Positions 6,807 through 35,484 of a stretch of DNA of 64,000 nt are shown here, in pieces. Position 1 is the first letter of the stretch. Each line of letters begins with the position of its first letter. Under the pieces are notes generated by a model. The model was not told the DNA's origin and did no database searches. It was given only the letters and a program-made list of their open reading frames with translations. The DNA is from Selaginella moellendorffii (lineage: Eukaryota > Plantae > Lycopodiophyta), in contig NW_003314339.1 in assembly GCF_000143415.4 (NCBI RefSeq), positions 613,751 to 677,750 of the forward strand. The letters are read 5' to 3'. Both the position numbers and the translations under genes were made by a program.

Positions 6807-8000
6807 ATGGATCTTGGCCAGTCTCCACACCGGCGTCAGATGGGATCTCTCGTAGATCTCTTCAACGAGCACGACGGGCGTCGTCCATTTTCACATCTCT
6901 CAGCCTCTTTCATCATCGATGTTTCAATTGATCTTGTCCAAGGTCTGGAACTACAAGACGAGAAGGTGCATGTTCACAGGAGTATCCCTGGATCGTAAGT
7001 GCTAGCGACGATCAAGCCATCAGGATTTGGAACTAGCAGTCCCGGACGTGCTGACGGGACACAATCACTACGGCTTCGTTTCACGTCAAGGACGATCTCA
7101 TGGTGTTTGCGTCGCTGAGACGGTCTCTCCAGCCGAGGATCTTCACAGAATTCTGAAACTCACGCAGATGAACAGCTAACGTTTTGGTGGCGACGATGCG
7201 GTGGTCAAGTATGTTCTCGAGGGGCATGACAGGGCTGCTTTCCATCCAAGCTTGCCGCTAGTTGTCTCTGGTGCTGACGATCGACAAGTAAAGCTGTGGA
7301 GGATAAATGTTAATATGTGGACTTGTTCTTTTGTTCTAGTTTCTAAACGCTTGCATTGGTTCCAGAAACAGGCTTGGGAGGTTGGTCACATCAACAACGT
7401 TTCCTGTGTCATGTTCCACACTGCCGGGACATCAAACTCGAGTCTGGGACTTGTCCAAGCGTTCTGCCGTACAAACTTTCAGGAGGGACCCGAGATGAAC
7501 TTTTTTGCGACAGGACAGGGCAGTGGAATTATCGTCTTCAAGCTCGAAAGAGAGAGGCCGGCTTATACAATCAGTGCGGGGGTGCTGTATTACGTCAAAG
7601 AAAAGGCTTTGAGGACTTACGACTTTGCCACTTCAGAGGACACATCACTGATAAACATTCGAAGAGCGGAGCTGAATCAGAGAACATTGTCTTGCAATCC
7701 AGCGGAGAACGCCGTGCTTTTATGCTCGGACCGTCACAACGGTACGTACAAATCCCGAGAAGTAATGACACTTCGGCCGAAGAAAGCCAGCGGGTCGTGG
7801 GGTGTTTCGTGCCCCGCAACCGCTTTGCCAAGGCGCACGGCTTGATTCTAGTCAAGAATCTGAGGAACGACGTCTCCAAGAGAGTCGAGGCTCCATTGGC
7901 GACAGTTGACGCCATCTTCTATGCGGGGACGGGATCTTAGAGCCTTCGACAGTGCAATGCGCCTTCTCACTCGGCAACTCGGGATCAAAAACTTCGGGTC
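6807..8000 (+). pseudogene. COPA: Coatomer alpha subunit (alpha-COP) pseudogene: WD40 N-terminal part plus a short C-terminal-region piece
   Basis: MGSLVDLFNEHDG; VVKYVLEGHDR..AAFHPSLPLVVSGADDRQVKLWR; GIIVFKLERERPAY; VDAIFYAGTG; then AFDSAMRLLTRQLGIKNF at ~7944-7998. Many deletions and frameshifts. Confidence 0.88.
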
Positions 8001-25090: not shown

Positions 25091-27319
25091 ATGGAGCAGC
25101 AATGGATCGATGCGCCGCCACCGCCGCCGCTGCCGCCTCCACAGCAGCCGCCGCCTCCGCCATGGCAGCCGCAATTGGATCGTCCTCTCCAGCAGCAACA
25201 ACATGGTCAGTTTTATGCACAGCAAGATCAGGTAACCCCTATTGTTTGCTGCTTGCTTGATGATTCCATTCCATTATCCATCCCACGCTATGGCACCATT
25301 TTATCCGAGAGATTGTTTCTCGCTTCTTCTGTGTGGCATGAGAGATTAGAAATCCTCTTCTCTGGTCTTACGAGTGTCGCCTTTTTCGTAGGCTTCCTCT
25401 GGATTGACTCAAGGTAGTGTGCGGTGACGTTTGGTTGTGGGAGGGATTTGGCTCACATTGTCTTCCAGCTGTGGATTGGGCCGCCAAAGCCAAGGCTTGG
25501 ATGAGCGCAAAATCTGCTGAGGGACGTATGAAAGCTGTAGCTCTGGATCCTCCTCCGGAAAGCTTGCAGCAGCCAAACGGAGGTAACTTTGGCTGCCATG
25601 ATCGATCACTCACACTCAACGTTTTCCTCTCGGTGTTTTTCGGTAGCAGCATTTTCTCCGCACCCTCACTTCTTGCCTCGGCCTCCAGAACTGCAACCAC
25701 GTCCAGCGCAAGTGTTACACCGTCTTTCTAGCGTCGATCCCTCGCAACATGGCTTCTCTGGAAGTCCATCAGGTGTTGTGTGGAGCGTTACTCCGACCAT
25801 GCCGCTTCCACCTTCTCAAGTATGTCTTTTTTCGCTGTTCCCGCTCTTTTTTTTTTTCTTCTCAGGCTTGTTTCTCATTGACCAGACTTTTCATCCCATT
25901 CAGCAACAGCCAACGTTTCCGAGGCTCCACGGCGTGGCATATCGACCAGCATTTGCTTTTGGAGCTAGTCCAGCTGTTCCAGTCGTTGATCCCGCGCAGC
26001 AAAAGAAGGTGCGTGAACAAGGGAAAAGGAATACCGCTCTTGTTCATCTCTTAATATACAGGCACCCGTTCCTTCTTGGCTGAGGGAGGAACTGAAGAAA
26101 AAGGTGAGGACGCCATCACTTGGCCCTGTCACGGACGTGACGAGAAAAAATACTTCGGAGGTTCTGAGGCCTGGCATAGACAGCACGCCAGTTTCGCCAG
26201 GTGGAAGTGAAACAGAAGGAGATGATGAGGTACTGCAAAAAAGGCATCTCACTGTTTTACGTGGACTTGCTCGTGACTTGCAGGACGATGCTGAAAGTGC
26301 TGCCACTTCTGTGATCAATCAAGAGATAAAGAGAGTTCTAACTGACGTTCTTTTGAAGGTATAATTAATTTATCATTTCCTTACTTTGCATCATCCATTT
26401 CAAACAGGTGACGGACGGGCTTTTCAATGAAATAGCACAAGAAATATTTGACGAGGAAGAGGTGAAGTCCCACGGTACGAGTTCTATGTTACTTTAGTTT
26501 TGTGCTGATTTAAAAATGGATTTTGTGAAGCCTCGGAAAAGAGGGAGACGGACAACATCCCGGCACCCAGTGCAGCTCCTGCCAGAGTTGTAGTTGCTGC
26601 TGGCGATGGTGAGGAAGCAGAGATAGATACGAACTGCGCGGGGAATTTCCTTGGCCTTGCAAGCTACGATTCAGATGACGACCAGACAGAAAAGAACGAC
26701 AAGAAGTCCACCAGCAGAGACACAGAACATGCTAAGGTGCCAAATAGTGAGAACCCTGTGGTTGCGGACCATCTCAAAACACAGGAAAAGTCTACTGGTC
26801 GTGAGCAGCTGCTGGCAAGGGATTCAGAACGCAACAAAGAGAATGAAGGTGACCCAAAGCTGAAGGAGAAGAAATCAAGAAAGGACAGGCGAACTGAACA
26901 TAATCTGAAGGGAAAGAGATACGAGCGCCATACTCCACGAAGTCGAAGCAGAAGCAGGAGTTTCTCTCCCAGGCGCTCCAGAAGTAGGAGCCCAAGTCGG
27001 AGAAGGTGTGTGTGTGTGATATTTAAAGTTCCGTGTTTGGAGCTGACAAATGTTCATGTCAGGAGTGACAAGCGACGGAGAAGCAGGTCTCGGTCGCCCA
27101 GACACTCTCAAAGGTTGGTTTTAGACATCGTGCAAACACTGACATCTTGCGTGCGTGTTTTAGAGATTCATCGCGTTCCTTCTCACGGTCCACTTCTTCT
27201 CCTCGTGAAGCTCGGAGGTACGTTTTTTGCCTTTTCCTTCTTAGTTTTATGTTGGAACCTTACTTAGACACAAGCACTCGAGGTCAAGGTCACCTGGACA
27301 CTGGCACAGTAGGAGATAG
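25091..27319 (+). CDS. PNISR (SFRS18)-like Pro-rich/RS-domain splicing-associated protein
   Basis: VDWAAKAKAW, VPSWLREELKKK, IKRVLTDVLLKVTDGLFNEIA, LGLASYDSDD, and a C-terminal RS tract. Confidence 0.7.
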
Positions 27320-27517
27320 ATGAATCAATGGTAAGCCATCCCGGCTTTACGGTTTTGAAGGTCACTTTGTCTGCAGTATGTGATTGCCGTTGCAAAATGT
27401 GGTGAGGTAATTAAGTGTCTTTTTTAGCTGTTAACTGACCTTGTTCTGTCTCAGGAATATCCATATCTCAAGTCTGAGGTTCTTGTTTGAGGATTCGGGG
27501 AAAGTGTTTTAACAGGC

Positions 27518-28262
27518 ATGTCATCGAGGTCCTTGTTCTGGTGGTGCAATCCTGTATGCAGCAGGCAATTCTCCGGCCGTTTTCCTGTTGCTTGCTGTCG
27601 ATTGGCCTTAAGGCAAGAACATACCCAGAGGATGATTGCAAGGGGATGGAGATGGGAGGAAAGTGAAGCTTTTGAGGAGAGTTTCAGCGATGCCGTGGAC
27701 ATGTTCAACAAGAGGGATTATTACAAGTGCCACGACATATTTGAGGCGCTCTGGAATGACGCAGAGGAACCTCAGCGAACTCTTCTTCATGCTTTGCTGC
27801 AATCTTCGGTTGGACTCTACCATCTTCTCAACCAGGTAAAGCTTTTTATCACAAGCTCAAAGAAAAGAACTAACACAGCTGTGCTCGGTGTAGAACTATA
27901 GAGGTGCTATGGTAGAATTAGGAGAGGGAGTATCAAAGTTTGGCAAGCTAAAGCTGAAGAAGGGACCATTCTACGAATTTGACAAGGAAATGAGAGCTGT
28001 CTTGGACTTTTTGTACAATACTCAACTGGAGAACGCAGCTTGCAATGATGATTTTTGTATTACGATGGATGGTTCCCAAGAAAATTATCAACTCTTGGGC
28101 AACTTTGGCGCGGGCGAAGAGTTGTACAAATTGGAAAAAGATGTAGCAGGTTATGGACACAGCCTCATATTTTCACCAACGAGAGTTGAACAAAAGAACA
28201 GCAGTCCAAGTGTGAAACTTCCAATATTACTTGCATGTGAAGGGGATTTGAATGAGTTGTAA
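27518..28262 (+). CDS. DUF309 family protein (2 exons)
   Basis: AVDMFNKRDYYKCHDIFEALW...LHALLQSSVGLYHLLNQNYRGAMVELGEG. Intron ~27836-27893. Confidence 0.85.
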
Positions 28263-28700
28263 TAGCTTGAAGTTTTTTATATTGGAACATAAAATACTTT
28301 GGAATATGAAAATTTACATTTTGAAGTTTCACTTTTATATTGAAATGGAAAGGCGCGGCGGTGGAAATATGATCAAGGGAGAAAGGAAGAAAAGGAACAT
28401 TTTCATGTTCATCCTAGAATTGAGGCCACATCCACTTTGACATACCAGATCGCAAGAAGAATATAGTTACCTATACCAAGCGGGCTCTTTCAAAGTTGGC
28501 GAGAAGCTGTTAGGTCAGTAAACGGTGGCTGCTAGATCGGCTGGAATTCGCCCCAGGAGTTGCTGCCAGCTTTATAGTTGATGCATTTCTTCCTTGGCAA
28601 CCAAAACTCGAACTCTGCTTAAAAAACCGACCCTTTTAGAAAGAGAGAAATAATCCAAGAAAACAGCTCTAGGGTTTTAGGAGAGGGAGAAGGAGAAGCG

Positions 28701-30305
28701 ATGAAGGCCTTGGTTTTCGAGGTGTGGGACTTGATGATCTGTGAGACTCGGCCGAGTTCCAAGCTGCCCGAGTCGTCCAAGATACGCCTGGATACCGGCA
28801 AGTCCAAGACGCTTATCAAGCGCCCTCATCTGGATGCGTTTCTCAAGCGCATGGCGGAGCTGTTCGTGCTGATTCCCTACACCACTCGCTCGCGGGGCGT
28901 CACTGACAAGGTGCTGGACGCGCTGGAGCCGGATGAGCACCGCTTCTCGCACAGGTTCTTCCTCGATTCGTGCGGCAATGGGATCCATGGCAAGACCAAG
29001 GACTTGAGGATCCTGCAATGGCCCATGGACCAGGTGATCGCTGTGGACGATTCGTGCTCCAAGTACGACAGCCACTCCGACAACGTTGTGATCATCCCAA
29101 CGTTCAGTCGGACTGATCTGCGGAAGGACCGGGTGCTGCTGGATCTTATGCCGTTTCTCGAGGGTCTTGCCAAGCGCGAAGTCGAGGACGTGAGGCCGGC
29201 CATCCGTGCGAGGTTTTTCGAGAACTTCCCGGTCGCGAAGAAGGGTAATCGGAAGCGGATGTTCGAGATGGTGCTCGAGAAGAATGTTCGGCCGGTGGAG
29301 ACGGTTCTAGTTGATGATCCGCCAATAGAGGACAAGAATGTGGTCGATCTGGATCCGGATGAGGAAACGAATGTGGTGGATCCGGTTGAAGCGATGGAAA
29401 CGAAGGTAAGTGATCTGGTGGAAGCGATGGAAACGAAGGTGAGTGACCAGGATGAAGTGGAAGAGATGGAAACGAAGGTGAGTGACCAGGATGAAGTGGA
29501 AGAGATGGAAACGAAAGTGAATGATCAGGACGAGCCAGTGGAAACGAAGGCGAGCGATCGGGAAGAGCCAGTGGAAGAGAGGGTAAAGAAGGTCCGCTGG
29601 CTCATTCCAGAGATGGAAAAGAATCGGGAAGAGCCAGTGGAAGAGATGGAAAAGGTGGCGAAGAAAGAGACGCGGAGGAATGAGCAACCGAGTGAAAGAG
29701 GGAGGATCAAAGCACTCGGCCGCGCGCTGCTAAAGGTTTTGCGTCAGCCAGTTCTTCATCCCAACTTGGAGATGCGACCCGACGGTTTTTGCAAGCTCGA
29801 GGAGCTGCTGGAGCTGGATTTCATGACAAAGTCAGGTGTACCTCTCAGCTCCCACACTGCTGCCGAGGCGATCAAGGCGGTGGACAAGCTGACTAAAAAG
29901 TTGGCCAAGATGGTGGACGAAACCGGAGCGCTTTACATCGGAGCACTCCAGGAACCAGTGGCACCTAATGGTGAGACCGAGCAGCTGTTCCAGAAGATCG
30001 AGAAGTCCCCGGTTTGTGTCTACGGCACATCCAAGCAGGAACTGGAGGAGATCATGAAGAATGGCCTCACGGCTTCGAGCTCGAACCCGATGTACCTGGT
30101 GATGGCAGTGCCGGACGCGGAGATCGCGAGTAGCATGCGCAACTCCAGCGAGGTTCTCATCACCGTCAACTTCCAGAAAGCTCGCAAGGACAGGAGCATC
30201 GAGTTCTACACGTCAGAGAATGGCTTGATCTTCAGCAGTGGCTCCATACTGGTCAAGTACTTCAAGCAGGTGGTGGAGCTGCCAAGCAACAAAGTGCTGC
30301 TCTAG
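28701..30305 (+). CDS. Intronless fusion: FCP1/SCP (NIF) HAD-phosphatase-like domain + acidic repeats + tRNA 2'-phosphotransferase (Tpt1/KptA)-like domain; both catalytically degenerate
   Basis: Intact 534-aa ORF. NIF: KRPHLDAFL..MAELF, HRFFLDSC, KDLRIL, DRVLLDLMPFLEGLA..DVRPAI. Tpt1: RIKALGRALLKVLRQ, MRPDGFCKLEELL, LSSHT, PVCVYGT, EFYTSENGLI. Confidence 0.85.
   Translation: MKALVFEVWDLMICETRPSSKLPESSKIRLDTGKSKTLIKRPHLDAFLKRMAELFVLIPYTTRSRGVTDKVLDALEPDEHRFSHRFFLDSCGNGIHGKTKDLRILQWPMDQVIAVDDSCSKYDSHSDNVVIIPTFSRTDLRKDRVLLDLMPFLEGLAKREVEDVRPAIRARFFENFPVAKKGNRKRMFEMVLEKNVRPVETVLVDDPPIEDKNVVDLDPDEETNVVDPVEAMETKVSDLVEAMETKVSDQDEVEEMETKVSDQDEVEEMETKVNDQDEPVETKASDREEPVEERVKKVRWLIPEMEKNREEPVEEMEKVAKKETRRNEQPSERGRIKALGRALLKVLRQPVLHPNLEMRPDGFCKLEELLELDFMTKSGVPLSSHTAAEAIKAVDKLTKKLAKMVDETGALYIGALQEPVAPNGETEQLFQKIEKSPVCVYGTSKQELEEIMKNGLTASSSNPMYLVMAVPDAEIASSMRNSSEVLITVNFQKARKDRSIEFYTSENGLIFSSGSILVKYFKQVVELPSNKVLL
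29340..29660 (+). repeat. In-frame 30-39-bp coding repeats (VEEMETKVSDQDE-like)
   Basis: Repeated gaagagatggaaacgaaggtgagtgaccaggatgaagtg units. Confidence 0.85.
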
Positions 30306-30462
30306 CTCCGGCCAAGGGGCCTCGGTTCTTAAGAGTAGTTAGATCTTTTCTCAAGTCTTGGAACGAATCTATAAGAAAGTTTTCTAGATATTTAATCAAT
30401 CAGTCTTCGATTGGCTTCCAAAAAAACGAAACATAAGAGAAAAAACGTCCTCATACCATAAG

Positions 30463-31178
30463 CTACTCTTCCTCCGCGATCGTCCCCTTCTCGCTCACGT
30501 AGATACCATCCAAGAACTTCCTGATGTCCTTGTTCTTCACATGGCATTTCTGGCAGCAAAAAAAAGAAGAAACATCACCTCTGAAAAACTGATATTTGCT
30601 TCTTCTCTCATCTCATACCTGGTTGATGAGAGCAGCGGATCTCGAGACAAGCTCGATGTCATTCCCCTCGAGAACAAGCTCGTCCTTGACCTTCTCTGTC
30701 CTGGTCACTGTGACGCCGGGGAGCATGTCCACGGTTCTCACCTGGAAAACAAGCACAAGCAATGGTGGTGGTGGTGTCAAGCCCAGCAGGAAGAAATCTG
30801 GAAGAAAACACTCACTCTCTTCTCGCCCAGAAAGTTGCGGATCTCGATGTTCTGCTTGGTGGCCGAGATGTTGGCGTTGATGGGGAAATGAGCGTAGACG
30901 AACCTCATCTTGTACTGGAAGCCCTTGGTCACTCCCGTGATGAGATTCTTGACGTGGCTCACGGCAGTGCGGATGGCAGCGATGGTCTTGCGCGATCCGA
31001 ACCAGGCCTCCACCTTGAGCTTCCTCCCATTCTCCAGCATCTGGAAATCCAGGTTGAGATGCTTGAAATTCCGGAGGAGAACGCCGCGGGGCCCCGACAC
31101 GCGGATCTGCTTCGCCCTGATCTCCACCTTCACCCCCTCGGGGATGTCCATCGTCTGCGAGGACAGGATCGTCTTCAT
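30463..31178 (-). CDS. RPL9: 60S ribosomal protein L9 (uL6), 3 exons
   Basis: [16 protein letters not shown]...[13 protein letters not shown]...[18 protein letters not shown]. Telo-boxes upstream at 31222-31240. Confidence 0.97.
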
Positions 31179-31329
31179 GGCGCTCCTCCCTCGCTCCTCC
31201 CCAAGAATGCAAGACGGCCTGCCCTAACCCTAAACCCTAAAACTCAAATCCTCAATGGAGTTTTAATCGAGGCCGTTGATCAAAGTATATTCTCCTCCTC
31301 TTGAAAATCGGCTCTCTCTCTCCTCTCGC

Positions 31330-33904
31330 TCACAGGAGCGACGAGCCGAGCTGGAGCATGAGAGGATAAATGGGAGTGAATTGCTTGTCGCCGCGAGCTC
31401 TCACCTTGGCCGCGTAATCGTCCAGCGTTCCCTTCACTTCTTTCCACACGTCTTGTTCGCTGTGCGTGTCCAGCCACAGCGAGTACTGCGACGCCGAGAG
31501 CTTGGATCTCTTCATCGGGGACTCGAGCTCGTCCGGCGCCCGGCTGTAGAGATGGTGAAACACCACACTCGCCGGCAGCTCCTGCAGCAGTGGGCTGCTC
31601 GCGATCTGGTTCGTCTCCAGGAAGATGAAAGGCCTGAATGCCCGCAGCGCTCGGTATGGAGCACCAAGTTGCTCCACGGGAAAGAGGTTCTGTGCCACAA
31701 GGAGCTCCAGCTCTGCCATGTCTCTCGCCATGCTCAGCTTCCCAGCCTCCGATAGCGGTCTCACCAGGGCAGCGTGTCTCACGAACAGGACGAGCACCCT
31801 GGAAGCCATCTTCCTCACGAAGTTGATCGACACCGACTTGGGATTCCCGGAGCTAGAGCCTGTCAAGAGCTTGGACAGGAACTCGGACCTGAAGTGAGTC
31901 GCGGCCTCTTGGATCTCCTGCATGTACTTGGGCCTCTCGTCGTCCACTGTCATATCCGAGTTGAAGTCCAGGCCTTGCATCTCTAGGATACTCTTCTCCA
32001 GTCTCTCCGCCATCGCCTTGAACAGCGGATTCACCGTGTCCACTGCCACGCCGTAGACAGCCCCGAGCGACGGAGAGAGGATGTCAGCGGCGGATGGCGA
32101 TAGGCCTGTCATCATTGAGCTCAATCTGTGATGGATGTCTTGCAAGTGATGGCACAGCGCAAAGTTCTTGAGCTGCGATGGCGTGGCTGGACCGGTCACC
32201 TGACGAGCATCAGGACCTGTTGCAAGCTGATAGAACAGCCCAAGTGAGCCTAAGACAAGGAAAGGCGGAAGAACAAGCTCACCTGGTACTCGGCTTTTTC
32301 AGCGAAGAGTTGCACAGACTTCCCAACTTCTTTAAGCACCATGAGCGTCAACCTGGCATCCAGCTTTGCAGCCTCAACCTCCTCCTGGATCCGTGCCACC
32401 AGCTTCGCAATCGGCTCCTCTGAAGTCGGAAGGCGAAGGAGAGTGGACGAAGCAAACATGTTGTTGACAAGGTCCGTGAGTCGTGCAAGTGTCTGGCCAA
32501 GGTACGCATTCTGGAACGGTTCCAGCGTCGTCACAAGCTGCTGTCTGTCCGCGTCCTTGATCGCCGGGGACGCACCTTTAACTTCCGTGTCGCGGACAAG
32601 CCTCTGGAGAAAGTTGTCCGCCACCCCGAGCAGCTTGGGATATCCCAGCACGAAGATCTCCTTGACAAAGCTCGATGAAGTGAACGCCGACTTCATCTGG
32701 CTGGCAAATGCCTTGACAATAGCCTCCCACACCCTCTCGGTCAGCGAGGCATCTCCAGCCTGCAAAGCCACACATTCGTGTTCAGTCACAAAAACTAAGA
32801 AGAACCTTGCCAGCAAGCAAAGCTTTCCTCTACCTGGACAACTTCATCGATGAAGCTGGCGTGAGAAACCGGATCCCTCTTCTTGATCATGACTCGCTCC
32901 AAGTGCCACACCGCCACCAAGATGGAGTGAAGCTGCTCCATGCATTGCCCAAGTCTCTGCCACAACCCATCCCTGGCCCTGGATCCAGCTCCCAGCTGCG
33001 GCGTCCCACTCCTGTGAGCTCCCCCTGGCCCCGCTGGGCCTGTGGCCGCCGCCGCCACGCTCGCGGAGATGGCCTTCATGTCGAGAGCACTCGCAATGCT
33101 CTTGACCGCCTGGCTCTTATACTTCTGGATCACGCTCTCCACTGTCGGCCGGAGCTCCCCGAGGTTGAAGTAGACTTGGAGCGCGGCACCAACTTGAGCT
33201 TGGTTGAAAGCTTTCATGCCAGCTTCCAGGCTCCGCATGGCCTCGCTCCGGATCTTGGTGCCAGCCTCCTTGAGCCAGGCCAGCTCCGAGTCCACCACCT
33301 CGATCCCGGAGAGATCAGCGTCACTGCGGAGCCCCTCGATCTCGCTCCACAGCTGCGCGGCCTTGGAGAGATCGGTTGGCTTGGAGGAATCGACGACGAG
33401 CTCGCGGAGGCGCTTGAGCTGCTTGAGCACGCGCACCACGGCGCGCAAGAGCTCCACGGTGGTGTGGAGGCAAGAGAGCTGCGTGGACTTGGATCGAATG
33501 CTCTTGTATGGCTCCGCTACCTCGGATCTCACCCGGCGCACGGAATTCTCTAGGCTCCCAACCCCGATCTTCACCACGCCCAGCGCGCCCTCCATGTCCT
33601 TGACGCTGCTCAGCTGCTGGACGAGCTCACTGTGGCGCAGCACGACCTCCCGCCTCAGCTGCTTCTCCAGCAGCGCCATGCCCTGCTCCACCTTCTCGGC
33701 CGACGCCGCGGCCGAGCCACTGCGCAGCGCATCGCTCGCGAACTGCGTCGCGTTGAAATCCTCCGACACAAACCTGCACAGCACCGGATCCCGGGCCATC
33801 TCGGCCAATGCATCCACCTCGGCGCCGCCAGCATCCTCCTCCTCGTGCTCGCGATCTCGAAACGAGGCAGATCGCATCCTGGGCGTACCCTGTTGGATCG
33901 GCAT
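31330..33904 (-). CDS. COG5: Conserved oligomeric Golgi complex subunit 5
   Basis: FVSEDFNATQFAS..., KKRDPVSH, LGYPKLL, FVRHAALVRPLSEAGKLSMARDMAELEL, LGAPYRALRAFRP. Confidence 0.92.
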
Positions 33905-33919
33905 TGTCACTCCCACCAC

Positions 33920-33937
33920 AAACCCTAATTAGGGTTT
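33920..33937. promoter_or_regulatory. Palindromic double telo-box (AAACCCTAATTAGGGTTT) between divergent COG5 and RlmN-like genes
   Basis: Perfect 18-bp palindrome in a 52-bp ATG-to-ATG spacer. Confidence 0.65.
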
Positions 33938-33956
33938 ATCCAAGAAACAGGGGACA

Positions 33957-35484
33957 ATGTCTCTCAGCTCCATTTTCGACGAGGGGATTCTCAAGGCGGA
34001 GCTCCAGCGCCATGGCATCAAGCCGCTACACGTCTACACCATCTGGAGGTAACATTCTCCATCGCGAATGGATGGATCGATCGCTCAATCGTCTCGTTCG
34101 TGCCCAGGCATGTCATGGATCACCCAAACGCGGCGTTGCACCAGGTACCGGGGCTGCCTGGCGCGCTCTATCCACTGCTGCGTACTCGATTTAAGGCGCT
34201 CACGTCCACATTGGCCGCTCACTCCACCTCCGCGAACGGCACTACCACCAAGCTCCTCCTCCAGCTCCAAGTAAAGTTTTTTTATGTTGTTGCTTCCTTC
34301 TATCTCAGGCTTGTTCTCGTGTGCTTAGAACAGAGTGGCCAATCTGTGGAGACAGTGATCATGCGGCATCACGGTGGAGCTGGGAAGTACGCCGGGGGCC
34401 CGAGACCTGGATCCGATCGTGCGACGCTCTGCGTCTCGTCTCAAGTGAGTGACTCGATCTCGCCTTTGGTTTTTTTGAGTGATTCTACTCGAAGTTCTTC
34501 AACTTCTAGGTGGGCTGCAAGATGGGCTGTAGCTTCTGCGCGACTGGGACGATGGGCTTCGTGGCCAACCTGACCGCGGGAGAGATTGTGGAGCAGTATG
34601 TTCACGCATCAAGGATGAGCCCCATCAGGAACATTGTTTTCATGGTGCGTTTCCTCCATGGAGTCCTATCAGATCTCACGCACTGTTTCTTCATTGAGCA
34701 GGGGATGGGAGAGCCTCTTAACAACTATAACTCGGTGGTGCAAGCCGTACAAACACTCACTGGACGCTGCTTTGGCCTGTCGCCAAGTCGTATCACCATC
34801 TCCACTGTAAGAAGTCTCAAACAAAACTCTTGTTTCAGCGCCTCCATCTTTTCCTTCCAGGTGGGAATTGTGCCTCGGATACTCTCGGTAGCAGGCGATC
34901 TCCCTGGCGTCAACCTGGCGCTCTCACTCCACGCTCCCACTCAAGCACTGCGCTGCCAGATCGTACCAGCCTCCCGGGCCTTCACGCTTGACAAGCTCAT
35001 GGCCGCCGTGGATGCGTATCAAGCATCAAGGTGAGCTCCAGCTCGAAGCTCCAGTTGTGTGAGTACTCACTCTCTCCCGTCCAGCAATCGCACGCTCTTC
35101 ATCGAGTACGTGATGTTGCAAGATGTCAACGATTCCTCTCAAGACGCTCGTCAGCTCGGGTGCCTGCTGCGAGACCGTAAAGTCGTAAGTTCTCCAGGTT
35201 GGTTTCTCGTCCCAGAGATTGAGATTTCATTGCAGGTGCTCAATCTCATCCCTTACAACCACACTTTTGTGGTTGGCGACTACAGGGCGACTCCGGCGGA
35301 TCGCGTGCACCACTTCCAGAAGATCGTCCGAGAAGAGTTTGGGATCCGCACGACCGTCCGCCAGGAAATGGGACAGGACATCGATGGAGCTTGCGGGCAG
35401 CTCGCTCTCAAGAAACTCGAAGCTTCACCAGATATGGAGGACATCTTCCTCGATCTCCAAAGGAGAGAAGAGAGTCGGAGATAG
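33957..35484 (+). CDS. Radical-SAM RNA methyltransferase, RlmN family
   Basis: TLCVSSQVGCKMGCSFCATG (CxxxCxxC), MGMGEPLNN, LALSLHAP, GQDIDGACGQL. Confidence 0.92.

What the first reader, a model, noticed from the sequence alone, without database searches (positions are those of the whole stretch)
28701..30305. Intact intronless chimeric gene joining two apparently dead enzymes: FCP1/SCP pseudo-phosphatase + Tpt1 (ADP-ribosyltransferase-fold) pseudoenzyme
Seen: an uninterrupted 534-codon ORF with no introns, among intron-rich neighbours. Residues ~1-175 follow the NIF/FCP1 HAD profile, but the catalytic DxDx(T/V) reads VFEVWDL. A repetitive acidic linker follows. The last ~200 aa are collinear with plant tRNA 2'-phosphotransferase. 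Established: Tpt1 needs an Arg-His-Arg-Arg tetrad and has RANQGHS and HGT motifs. Here RH is RQ, KQRF is KKLA, RANQGHS is GALQEPV, HGT is YGT, and the R.HVH segment is SSSNPMYL. Inference: both active sites are lost while folds and frame are retained. This suggests a lineage-specific scaffold, reader or decoy that links phospho-protein binding (e.g. Pol II CTD) to nucleic-acid or NAD binding, perhaps built from retrocopies. I know of no described NIF-Tpt1 fusion.
Basis: partly seen in the sequence, partly recalled or inferred. Interest (0 to 1): 0.82.

Follow-up and report, generated by a model that had tools for sequence, protein, structure and literature searches.

The report
Expressed dead-phosphatase–dead-Tpt1 fusion gene
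A spikemoss (Selaginella moellendorffii) gene joins a phosphatase-like domain and an RNA 2'-phosphotransferase-like domain that have both lost their catalytic residues; it is transcribed and intact on both haplotypes but seems only weakly constrained today, so it is a lineage-specific curiosity and not a proven new mechanism.

Summary
Window 28701-30305 (+) is an intronless 534-codon ORF of Selaginella moellendorffii. It matches Pfam NIF (residues 7-165, E 3e-28) and Tpt1/PTS_2-RNA (337-514, E 1e-29), joined by an acidic tandem-repeat linker. Motif I of the NIF domain (DxDxT) reads E-V-W-D-L. The Tpt1 Arg-His-Arg-Arg tetrad keeps one residue of four, and HGT is YGT.

The ORF is intact on the other haplotype (530 aa) and in RefSeq (XP_002987040.2, 521 aa, uncharacterized). 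It is covered by unspliced RNA contigs in four transcriptomes.

No other protein with both domains appeared among 1.84 billion cluster representatives, and no paper describes it.

The Tpt1-like domain sits on a branch of about 4.5 substitutions per site yet keeps frame, collinearity and fold. This implies long maintenance as a non-catalytic protein.

Recent variation (22 nonsynonymous : 12 synonymous) does not reject neutrality, and pN is 3-5 times that of neighbouring genes. Present-day function is therefore uncertain.

The scan already noted the other-haplotype copy (s1-420056). It also noted a sibling fusion with an apparently intact Tpt1 (s1-434250, s1-334468), which I could not retrieve or test.

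Verdict: a real double pseudoenzyme, a new variant of a known kind, of moderate interest.

The parts
28579..28700 (+). 5' UTR (minimum extent)
   Evidence: The RNA contig of run X1 starts at 28579. The intergenic stretch 28441-28600 is nearly empty in all runs. In-frame stop at 28620-28622.
28701..30305 (+). Intronless coding sequence, 534 codons plus stop
28719..29195 (+). NIF / FCP1-homology (SCP-like HAD) pseudo-phosphatase domain, residues 7-165
   Evidence: Pfam PF03031 E 3e-28. PDB CTDSPL 2hhl E 3e-15. 30 of 54 conserved family columns kept.
28710..28736 (+). Degenerate motif I: L-V-F-E-V-W-D-L-M in place of L-V-L-D-L-D-E-T-L (nucleophile Asp->Glu7, general acid/base Asp->Trp9, Thr->Leu11)
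   Evidence: Roles of the two Asp from PMC4436666.
29226..29675 (+). Acidic linker, residues 176-325, net charge -23
29363..29654 (+). Imperfect 33/39-nt tandem repeats (13-aa units such as EEMETKVSDQDEV). Copy number varies between haplotypes and strains, always in frame (12-nt and 39-nt indels).
   Evidence: (joint 29477>29517 in X15)
29709..30242 (+). Tpt1/KptA-like pseudo-enzyme domain, residues 337-514
   Evidence: Pfam PF01885 E 1e-29. TRPT1 7yw2 E 7e-11. AF2 model with pLDDT 82 and TM 0.74-0.77 to 7yw3/7yw2.
29742..29747 (+). Tetrad positions 1-2: Arg348 kept, His->Gln349
29940..29957 (+). G-A-L-Q-E-P in place of R-A-N-Q-G-H (tetrad Arg3 -> Gly414)
30021..30029 (+). Y-G-T in place of the NAD+-contacting H-G-T
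   Evidence: Role of HGT from PMC6333775.
30075..30098 (+). S-S-S-N-P-M-Y-L in place of M-x-R-x-H-x-H-F (tetrad Arg4 -> Ser461)
30306..30514 (+). 3' UTR region, converging on and apparently overlapping the 3' end of RPL9 (minus strand, poly(A) site near 30391)
   Evidence: poly-T loose end before 30391 in X15, and contigs of X1 and X5 that run from RPL9 exons into 29781/29968

Best explanation
This is a genuine, transcribed, lineage-specific protein-coding gene of Selaginella moellendorffii (RefSeq LOC9662741, UniProt D8SQ72). Its product is a double pseudoenzyme: an SCP-like NIF domain without its DxDxT centre, an expandable acidic repeat linker, and a land-plant-derived Tpt1 domain without its RNA-phosphate tetrad or NAD+ histidine.

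Shown: the ORF is intact on two haplotypes and in a third expressed variant, and it is transcribed without splicing. Both catalytic centres are gone, while hydrophobic core positions, domain boundaries and the predicted fold are kept. The sequence has diverged far more than an unconstrained ORF could survive.

Inferred: for most of its history it was kept by selection as a non-catalytic protein. It most probably works through protein-protein contacts of the two retained folds plus the acidic disordered linker. It could be an adaptor, or a competitor in the pathway of its catalytically competent relatives (the canonical Tpt1, and the NIF-Tpt1 sibling reported by this scan). It probably does not bind phosphate, NAD+ or 2'-phospho-RNA in the old pockets.

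Present-day constraint is weak, so it may now be drifting towards loss.
For: Domains and dead motifs. The essential roles of the lost residues come from PMC6333775 for the tetrad and HGT and from PMC4436666 for the first Asp as nucleophile and the second as general base.

Intact in other copies: L001, 530 aa, and XP_002987040.2, 521 aa, 100% identical apart from one 13-aa repeat.

Transcription: four runs are shown to be RNA by the spliced neighbours. They cover 28579-30297 with no spliced joint and leave the upstream intergenic stretch empty. Alleles of both haplotypes are seen.

Selective pattern of loss: 37 of 67 columns conserved at 90% or more in canonical Tpt1 are kept, mostly Leu/Ile/Val/Gly/Pro/Tyr/Phe. 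The catalytic Arg/His/Asn positions are replaced. The same holds for NIF, with 30 of 54 kept.

Fold: the AF2 model has pLDDT 82 and TM 0.74-0.77 to TRPT1.

Long maintenance: the stem branch is about 4.5 substitutions per site against a median tip of 0.33. Mean identity to canonical domains is 35%, against 66% among them. A neutral ORF of this length stays open in only 1.3% of simulations at 0.1 substitutions per site.

The dispersed 3' fragments at about 90% identity already carry the dead motifs. They have lost conserved G442, L456 and R480, which the gene keeps.
Against: Recent variation does not show purifying selection. There are 17N:9S changes between haplotypes (dN/dS 0.54) and 22N:12S with the third variant. 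P for a deficit of nonsynonymous changes is 0.07-0.35, depending on transition bias. pN is 3-5 times that of neighbouring genes at similar pS.

Derived changes hit conserved structural positions: P517L in the window allele, and L416P and A421P in the other.

No orthologue was found in any other species, so conservation across species is not shown.

No single RNA contig spans both domains, because assemblies break in the repeats. There is no protein-level evidence: the protein is absent from the one phosphoproteome checked.

The binding or adaptor mechanism is inference only. The AF2 confidence leans on an alignment of canonical Tpt1s; the single-sequence model failed with pLDDT 36.
Confidence: 0.55

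Rival explanations
1. A gene recently released from constraint: an expressed duplicate of a NIF-Tpt1 fusion that no longer does anything, and whose frame is still open only because too little time has passed.
For: Polymorphism is compatible with neutrality. pN is 3-5 times the neighbours'. Each haplotype has derived changes at conserved positions. Partial copies lie scattered in the genome. No orthologue was found elsewhere.
Against: The amount of divergence is far beyond what a neutral ORF survives: 65% of residues differ from canonical Tpt1, the stem is about 4.5 substitutions per site, and 30 of 67 invariant columns are changed. Any fully neutral phase must therefore be short (about 0.05 substitutions per site or less) and recent. 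Losses are concentrated in catalytic polar residues while the core is kept. All indels are in frame. The gene keeps conserved residues that the fragments lost.
Confidence: 0.3
2. Still an enzyme with non-canonical chemistry, for example a Glu7 nucleophile in the HAD site, or a Tpt1-fold activity that does not need the tetrad.
For: NIF motif II Thr61, motif III Lys100 and motif IV Asp116 are kept. Arg348, Lys399, Gln417, Gly442-Thr443, Ser477 and Arg480 are kept in the Tpt1 part.
Against: Both Asp and the Thr of DxDxT are replaced, with a bulky Trp at the general acid/base position. Three of the four tetrad residues, each individually essential, are gone, as is the HGT His. The catalytic loops are the least confident parts of the model.
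Confidence: 0.05
3. A TIM50-type mitochondrial import subunit, as UniProt's automatic name says.
For: Tim50 is a NIF-fold protein, and the PDB Tim50 chains match at E about 3e-10. UniRef name.
Against: SCP/CTDSPL chains match better (E 3e-15). The closest relatives are SCP-like small proteins. The protein begins directly at motif I, leaving no room for a presequence or membrane anchor. Tim50 has no Tpt1 domain.
Confidence: 0.02
4. An assembly or annotation artefact that joins two separate genes.
For: The GenBank model EFJ13404.1 is mis-modelled (450 aa, false intron). RNA assemblies break inside the repeats.
Against: The same continuous ORF is present in two haplotype scaffolds of an independent assembly and in this window. 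RNA depth is even on both sides of the repeats. An X15 contig bridges the repeat block.
Confidence: 0.02

Closest known systems
SCP/CTDSP-type small CTD phosphatases (NIF / FCP1-homology domain, DxDxT acyl-phosphatases); in plants the SSP family
   Same: Full-length Pfam NIF match. Best solved relatives are CTDSPL and SCP1. Motif II Thr, motif III Lys and the first motif IV Asp are kept, as is the C-terminal LLDLxPFL...DVR signature.
   Different: Motif I is E-V-W-D-L, with no nucleophile, no general acid/base and no Thr. Motif IV is DD instead of DN. The domain is fused to a Tpt1-like domain. The nearest relatives are intronless Selaginella genes (P0017/P0157) that already read D-M-N-H-T.
Tpt1 / KptA / TRPT1 RNA 2'-phosphotransferase
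   Same: Two-lobe domain, collinear over the whole Pfam profile, including the land-plant-type segment between the lobes. The predicted fold superposes on human and mouse TRPT1.
   Different: Only Arg348 of the Arg-His-Arg-Arg tetrad is left. HGT reads YGT. 30 of 67 near-invariant columns are changed. The branch is more than 10 times longer than those of canonical plant Tpt1s.
Schizosaccharomyces Tpt1-Yae1 fusion (PMC12810181)
   Same: A natural, lineage-restricted fusion of a Tpt1 domain with an unrelated domain.
   Different: There both domains are active and essential, and Tpt1 is N-terminal. Here Tpt1 is C-terminal, the partner is a NIF domain, and both look dead.
Yeast Tim50 and other catalytically dead NIF-fold proteins
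   Same: A NIF fold kept without phosphatase chemistry and used for binding (established knowledge; the Tim50 PDB match is).
   Different: No presequence or membrane anchor, different partner domain, and closer to SCPs than to Tim50.
NIF(one Asp lost)-Tpt1(intact) fusion of about 424 aa in the same genome (scan notes s1-434250, s1-334468)
   Same: Same domain order, same species, intronless and expressed, according to those notes.
   Different: Its Tpt1 is said to be intact and it lacks the long acidic linker. I could not retrieve its sequence, so the relationship is untested.

Membership tests
NIF / FCP1-homology domain (Pfam PF03031) | Profile match above the gathering score over the whole domain | tested here: met
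   98.9 bits against a cut-off of 21.8; profile positions 6-160 of 160
Active FCP/SCP phosphatase (DxDxT acyl-phosphatase) | DxDx(T/V) motif I with nucleophile Asp and general acid/base Asp | tested here: not met
   E7-V-W9-D-L11 at the aligned positions. Roles of the residues from PMC4436666.
Active FCP/SCP phosphatase (DxDxT acyl-phosphatase) | Motif II Thr/Ser, motif III Lys, motif IV Asp-Asn/Asp | tested here: met
   T61, K100 and D116-D117 are kept
Active FCP/SCP phosphatase (DxDxT acyl-phosphatase) | Mg2+-dependent phosphatase activity | not testable with these tools
   needs recombinant protein
Tpt1 / KptA (Pfam PF01885) | Profile match above the gathering score over both lobes | tested here: met
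   104.2 bits against a cut-off of 26; profile positions 4-177 of 177
Tpt1 / KptA (Pfam PF01885) | Two-lobe Tpt1 fold | tested here: met
   AF2 with alignment gives pLDDT 82. Foldseek hits 7yw3 and 7yw2 at TM 0.74-0.77, followed by 20 further Tpt1/KptA chains. The model depends on the alignment.
Active Tpt1 enzyme | [quoted passage not shown] | tested here: not met
   R348 is kept; the other three are Q349, G414 and S461. Essentiality from PMC6333775.
Active Tpt1 enzyme | HGT motif contacting NAD+ | tested here: not met
   Y441-G-T
Active Tpt1 enzyme | NAD+-dependent removal of RNA 2'-phosphate; complementation of yeast tpt1 | not testable with these tools
   bench assay needed
TIM50 | N-terminal presequence and transmembrane anchor ahead of the NIF domain | tested here: not met
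   The protein starts three residues before motif I, with an upstream in-frame stop and no spliced 5' exon
Retrocopy | Intronless copy of an intron-containing parent, with a poly(A) remnant and target-site duplications | tested here: inconclusive
   Intronless. The A-rich tract about 140 nt after the stop lies in the RPL9 3' UTR and cannot be assigned. The parent genes were not retrieved.
Processed or unitary pseudogene | Stops, frameshifts or lack of transcription | tested here: not met
   No stop or frameshift in three alleles, and the gene is transcribed

The most novel reading that the evidence does not exclude
Selaginella carries a private family of NIF-Tpt1 fusion proteins. In that family this catalytically dead member, with its copy-number-variable acidic repeat linker, would act as a pseudoenzyme regulator (partner, decoy or competitor) of the active fusion or of canonical Tpt1. 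That would tie RNA 2'-phosphate or ADP-ribose chemistry to a phosphoprotein-binding platform.
Probability: 0.15. Interest if true: 0.7.

Novelty: new variant of a known kind. Interest (0 to 1): 0.4.

Why it matters
Tpt1 is a single-domain enzyme almost everywhere, and natural fusions are rare; the Schizosaccharomyces Tpt1-Yae1 case was only recently dissected. A lycophyte-specific NIF-Tpt1 architecture, and within it a member that has shed both chemistries yet kept both folds through very large divergence, would be a clean natural example of how enzyme folds are re-used as non-catalytic modules. If it regulates the active paralogue, it would point to a link between RNA 2'-phosphate or ADP-ribose metabolism and phosphoprotein signalling in plants. 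Its weak present-day constraint and restriction to one species limit the reach of the finding.

Tried and rejected
(1) Word-index searches with the whole protein and with its Tpt1 part found only the other-haplotype model.

(2) A third word search, with a canonical Psilotum Tpt1 domain and meant to pull out Selaginella's own Tpt1 or the sibling fusion, listed 120 of 891 hits. None was from Selaginella.

(3) I checked 25 long or multi-stretch hits by Pfam and all 154 retrieved proteins by local phmmer for the two-domain architecture. None has it.

(4) I looked up the sources of 20 hits. The only Selaginella entries were fragments of this gene and standalone NIF genes.

(5) The single-sequence AF2 model failed (pLDDT 36).

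(6) A mixed full-length alignment for folding both domains was discarded, because MAFFT placed the Tpt1 N-lobes under the NIF domain.

(7) The ESM Atlas feature search gave no usable hit.

(8) Domain net charge and pI, as a proxy for lost RNA binding, differed too little to mean anything.

(9) The phosphoproteome paper and its supplements do not list the protein.

(10) The fragments L002 and L003 are not retrocopies, because L003 runs into the convergent RPL9 gene.

(11) The findings look-up by sequence was blank.
Full report
WHAT IS THERE. Window 28701-30305 (+) is an uninterrupted ATG-to-stop ORF of 534 codons. An in-frame stop lies at 28620-28622 (read), so the protein starts with M-K-A-L-V-F-E-V-W-D-L. 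Pfam gives two full-length domain matches, both far above the curated cut-offs. NIF (PF03031) covers residues 7-165 and profile positions 6-160 of 160, with E 3e-28. PTS_2-RNA/Tpt1 (PF01885) covers residues 337-514 and profile positions 4-177 of 177, with E 1e-29. Among solved structures, the N-terminal part is closest to human CTDSPL/SCP1 (E 3e-15 to 5e-14), ahead of CTDNEP1 and Tim50. The C-terminal part is closest to mouse and human TRPT1 (E 7e-11, 5e-10). Between the domains lie about 150 residues with net charge -23. They are built partly from imperfect 33/39-nt tandem repeats at 29363-29654.

ORGANISM AND COPIES. The nearest database protein is Selaginella moellendorffii SELMODRAFT_424529 (EFJ13404.1, UniProt D8SQ72). 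It is 96-97% identical and already carries both Pfam domains. Its locus (L001, scaffold GL377633.1) has the same neighbours, RPL9 and then COG5, and is the other haplotype. At DNA level that copy holds an intact 530-codon ORF, which differs by one 12-nt in-frame indel in the repeats and 26 substitutions. The 450-aa GenBank model is a false intron. RefSeq XP_002987040.2 ('uncharacterized protein LOC9662741', 521 aa) is 100% identical to the window's ORF apart from one missing 13-aa repeat. The gene is therefore in the databases but uncharacterized. UniProt's automatic name 'TIM50' is not supported.

TRANSCRIPTION. Sixteen small assemblies from eight or nine studies hold 50-80% of the locus's 31-mers. 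I laid four of them on 27001-31800. All four are RNA. The upstream DUF309 gene shows GT..AG joints at 27111>27162, 27215>27266, 27404>27453 and 27833>27892. RPL9 on the minus strand shows CT..AC joints at 30549>30619 and 30736>30811. The intergenic stretch 28441-28600 is almost empty. The ORF is covered from 28579 to 30297 in all four runs with no spliced joint. The only joint inside it (29477>29517 in X15, GT..AA) is the loss of one 39-nt repeat unit. Alleles of both haplotypes are seen, and X15 carries a third variant. The caveat is that assemblies break in the repeats, so no single contig carries both domains. Even depth on both sides (X2: 62 and 58) and a bridging contig in X15 imply one transcript.

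BOTH ACTIVE SITES ARE GONE. I aligned the NIF part with 104 NIF domains. The family's L-V-L-D-L-D-E-T-L reads L-V-F-E-V-W-D-L-M. The first Asp forms the covalent aspartyl-phosphate and the second is the general base (PMC4436666). Here they are Glu7 and Trp9, and the Thr is Leu11. Thr61 (motif II), Lys100 (motif III) and Asp116 (motif IV) remain. Overall 30 of 54 columns conserved at 80% or more are kept.

I aligned the Tpt1 part with 149 canonical domains. It keeps 37 of 67 columns conserved at 90% or more. Most of those kept are Leu, Ile, Val, Gly, Pro, Tyr or Phe. The Arg-His-Arg-Arg tetrad, each member of which is essential (PMC6333775), is reduced to Arg348, with Gln349, Gly414 and Ser461 at the other three positions.

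FOLD. A single-sequence AlphaFold model failed (pLDDT 36). With a 36-row alignment the Tpt1-like domain models at mean pLDDT 82. It superposes on human and mouse TRPT1 (TM 0.74-0.77) and then on twenty further Tpt1/KptA chains. Its only Atlas neighbour family is PF01885. The least confident stretches (model residues 101-110 and 141-160) are the two former catalytic loops. This model leans on canonical homologues, so it shows compatibility with the fold and nothing stronger.

ORIGIN. The Tpt1-like domain carries the land-plant-type segment between the lobes (M-T-K-S-G-V-P-L-S-S-H-T against K-T-F-A-N-V-P-L-R-S-H-T), which protist and bacterial members lack. By path length its nearest neighbours are Psilotum, Riccia and Marchantia Tpt1s. 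It therefore descends from a plant Tpt1. The closest NIF domains in 1.84 billion representatives are standalone, intronless S. moellendorffii genes (P0017/P0157/P0022, 36-43% identity). These already read D-M-N-H-T and share the unusual V-D-D-S motif IV.

Notes of this scan report three related loci in the same genome: a ~424-aa NIF(one Asp lost)-Tpt1(intact) fusion (s1-434250, s1-334468), a canonical Tpt1 next to PARG (s1-392320), and the L001 copy of the present gene (s1-420056). I could not retrieve the sibling's sequence with the searches left. The attractive reading, that this gene is a degenerate duplicate of that fusion, is therefore a lead and not a result.

HOW WIDESPREAD. An exhaustive phmmer search of 1.84 billion 50%-cluster representatives gave 3675 hits. 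The only one with both domains is the other-haplotype model. Pfam scans of 25 long or multi-stretch hits and a local phmmer run over all 154 retrieved proteins found none. Word-index searches agree. The limits are that relatives at 50% identity or more are hidden under their representative, and that the word searches cannot see fragments shorter than 294 aa. Fragmentary orthologues in close Selaginella species are therefore not excluded. No paper in the searchable library links NIF/FCP1-homology with Tpt1 or names this gene.

SELECTION, DEEP. The two alleles sit on a stem of about 4.5 substitutions per site, against a median tip of 0.33 for canonical Tpt1s. Mean identity to canonical domains is 35%, against 66% among them. 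In simulations with substitutions only, a copy of this ORF stays open in 28% of runs at 0.026 substitutions per site, 10% at 0.05, 1.3% at 0.1 and never at 0.2. Frame, collinearity and core residues survived that much change. The losses are concentrated in catalytic polar residues. This means that most of the divergence, including most of the active-site loss, happened under selection for a protein that did not need catalysis.

Two dispersed DNA fragments of the 3' part support this. L002 matches 29829-30268 and L003 matches 29980-30514, both at about 90% identity. L003 runs into RPL9, so these are segmental copies and not retrocopies. Both fragments already carry the dead motifs. At the three gene-versus-fragment differences that canonical Tpt1 can polarise (G442, L456, R480), the gene keeps the ancestral residue.

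SELECTION, RECENT. Between haplotypes there are 17 nonsynonymous and 9 synonymous changes, giving dN/dS of 0.54. With the third variant the counts are 22 and 12. Allowing for the observed transition bias, the neutral share of nonsynonymous changes is 0.69-0.77, and the deficit has P of 0.07-0.35. Coding chunks of the neighbours show pN/pS of 0.1-0.3 and pN of 0.002-0.005. This gene shows pN of 0.014 at similar pS. Some derived changes hit conserved positions: P517L in the window allele, and L416P and A421P in the other. Present-day constraint is therefore weak at best, and a recent slide into decay cannot be excluded.

MECHANISM. Shown: an expressed, intact, two-fold protein without either catalytic centre. 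Inferred: it acts, or acted, non-catalytically. The missing residues are the ones that bind Mg2+/phosphate in NIF enzymes and the 2'/3'-phosphates and NAD+ in Tpt1. I therefore think 'reading' phospho-ligands or NAD+ through the old pockets is unlikely. I favour protein-protein contacts of the retained folds, plus the acidic and probably disordered linker: an adaptor or competitor in the pathway of its active relatives. I put this at 0.55, recent functionless drift at 0.3, residual unusual catalysis at 0.05, and TIM50 or an artefact at about 0.02 each.

VERDICT. This is a lineage-specific double pseudoenzyme, a new variant of known kinds (dead NIF folds, rare Tpt1 fusions). It is present but uncharacterized in databases and undescribed in the literature searched. 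Interest is moderate (0.4). The sibling with an intact Tpt1 is the better entry point for bench work, and the relationship between the two is the first thing to settle.

Noticed in passing
window 27061-28296 (+): The upstream neighbour is a DUF309-domain gene (Pfam E 3e-18) with several 48-65-nt GT..AG introns. Runs X15 and X5 use a different junction at 27387/27389>27453, with 25-27 extra letters. This could be an allelic indel or an alternative donor.
   Followed up: partly
window 30391-31300 (-): RPL9 (Ribosomal_L6) converges on the fusion gene. Its poly(A) site is near 30391 (poly-T loose end in X15). RNA contigs of X1 and X5 run from RPL9 exons down to 29781/29968, so the 3' ends of the two genes appear to overlap tail to tail.
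   Followed up: partly
L002:4951-5377 and L003:7927-8466: Dispersed 440-540-bp DNA fragments of the gene's 3' part (about 90% identity) are annotated in GenBank as hypothetical proteins (SELMODRAFT_431743/426290 and 404571/404569). They show CpG decay (R480C, R495C). The L003 fragment includes part of the RPL9 3' end.
   Followed up: yes
L003:6959-7285 and 7521-7858: A large inverted repeat (foldback, arms of about 330 nt, 93-98% complementary) lies about 70 nt upstream of the gene fragment. It may be a transposon-like element involved in moving the fragment.
   Followed up: no
L004:5001-5600: P0017 is a standalone intronless SCP-like NIF gene (199 aa) whose motif I reads D-M-N-H-T, so the second catalytic Asp is lost. 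It lies between an INTS2 gene and an NB-ARC/LRR resistance-type gene. It is the closest relative of the window's NIF domain.
   Followed up: partly
window 29363-29654: The coding tandem repeats are polymorphic in copy number. There is a 12-nt indel against the other haplotype. One 39-nt unit is missing in RefSeq XP_002987040.2 and in RNA of run X15.
   Followed up: yes
L001:6001-7421: GenBank model EFJ13404.1 (450 aa) introduces a false intron in the Tpt1-like part, although the locus encodes a continuous 530-aa ORF. The UniRef name 'TIM50' is an automatic mis-assignment.
   Followed up: yes
window 31283-34000 (-) and beyond: By synteny with L001, the downstream genes are COG5, a radical-SAM protein and an acyl-ACP thioesterase. 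Between haplotypes they show pN/pS of 0.1-0.3.
   Followed up: partly
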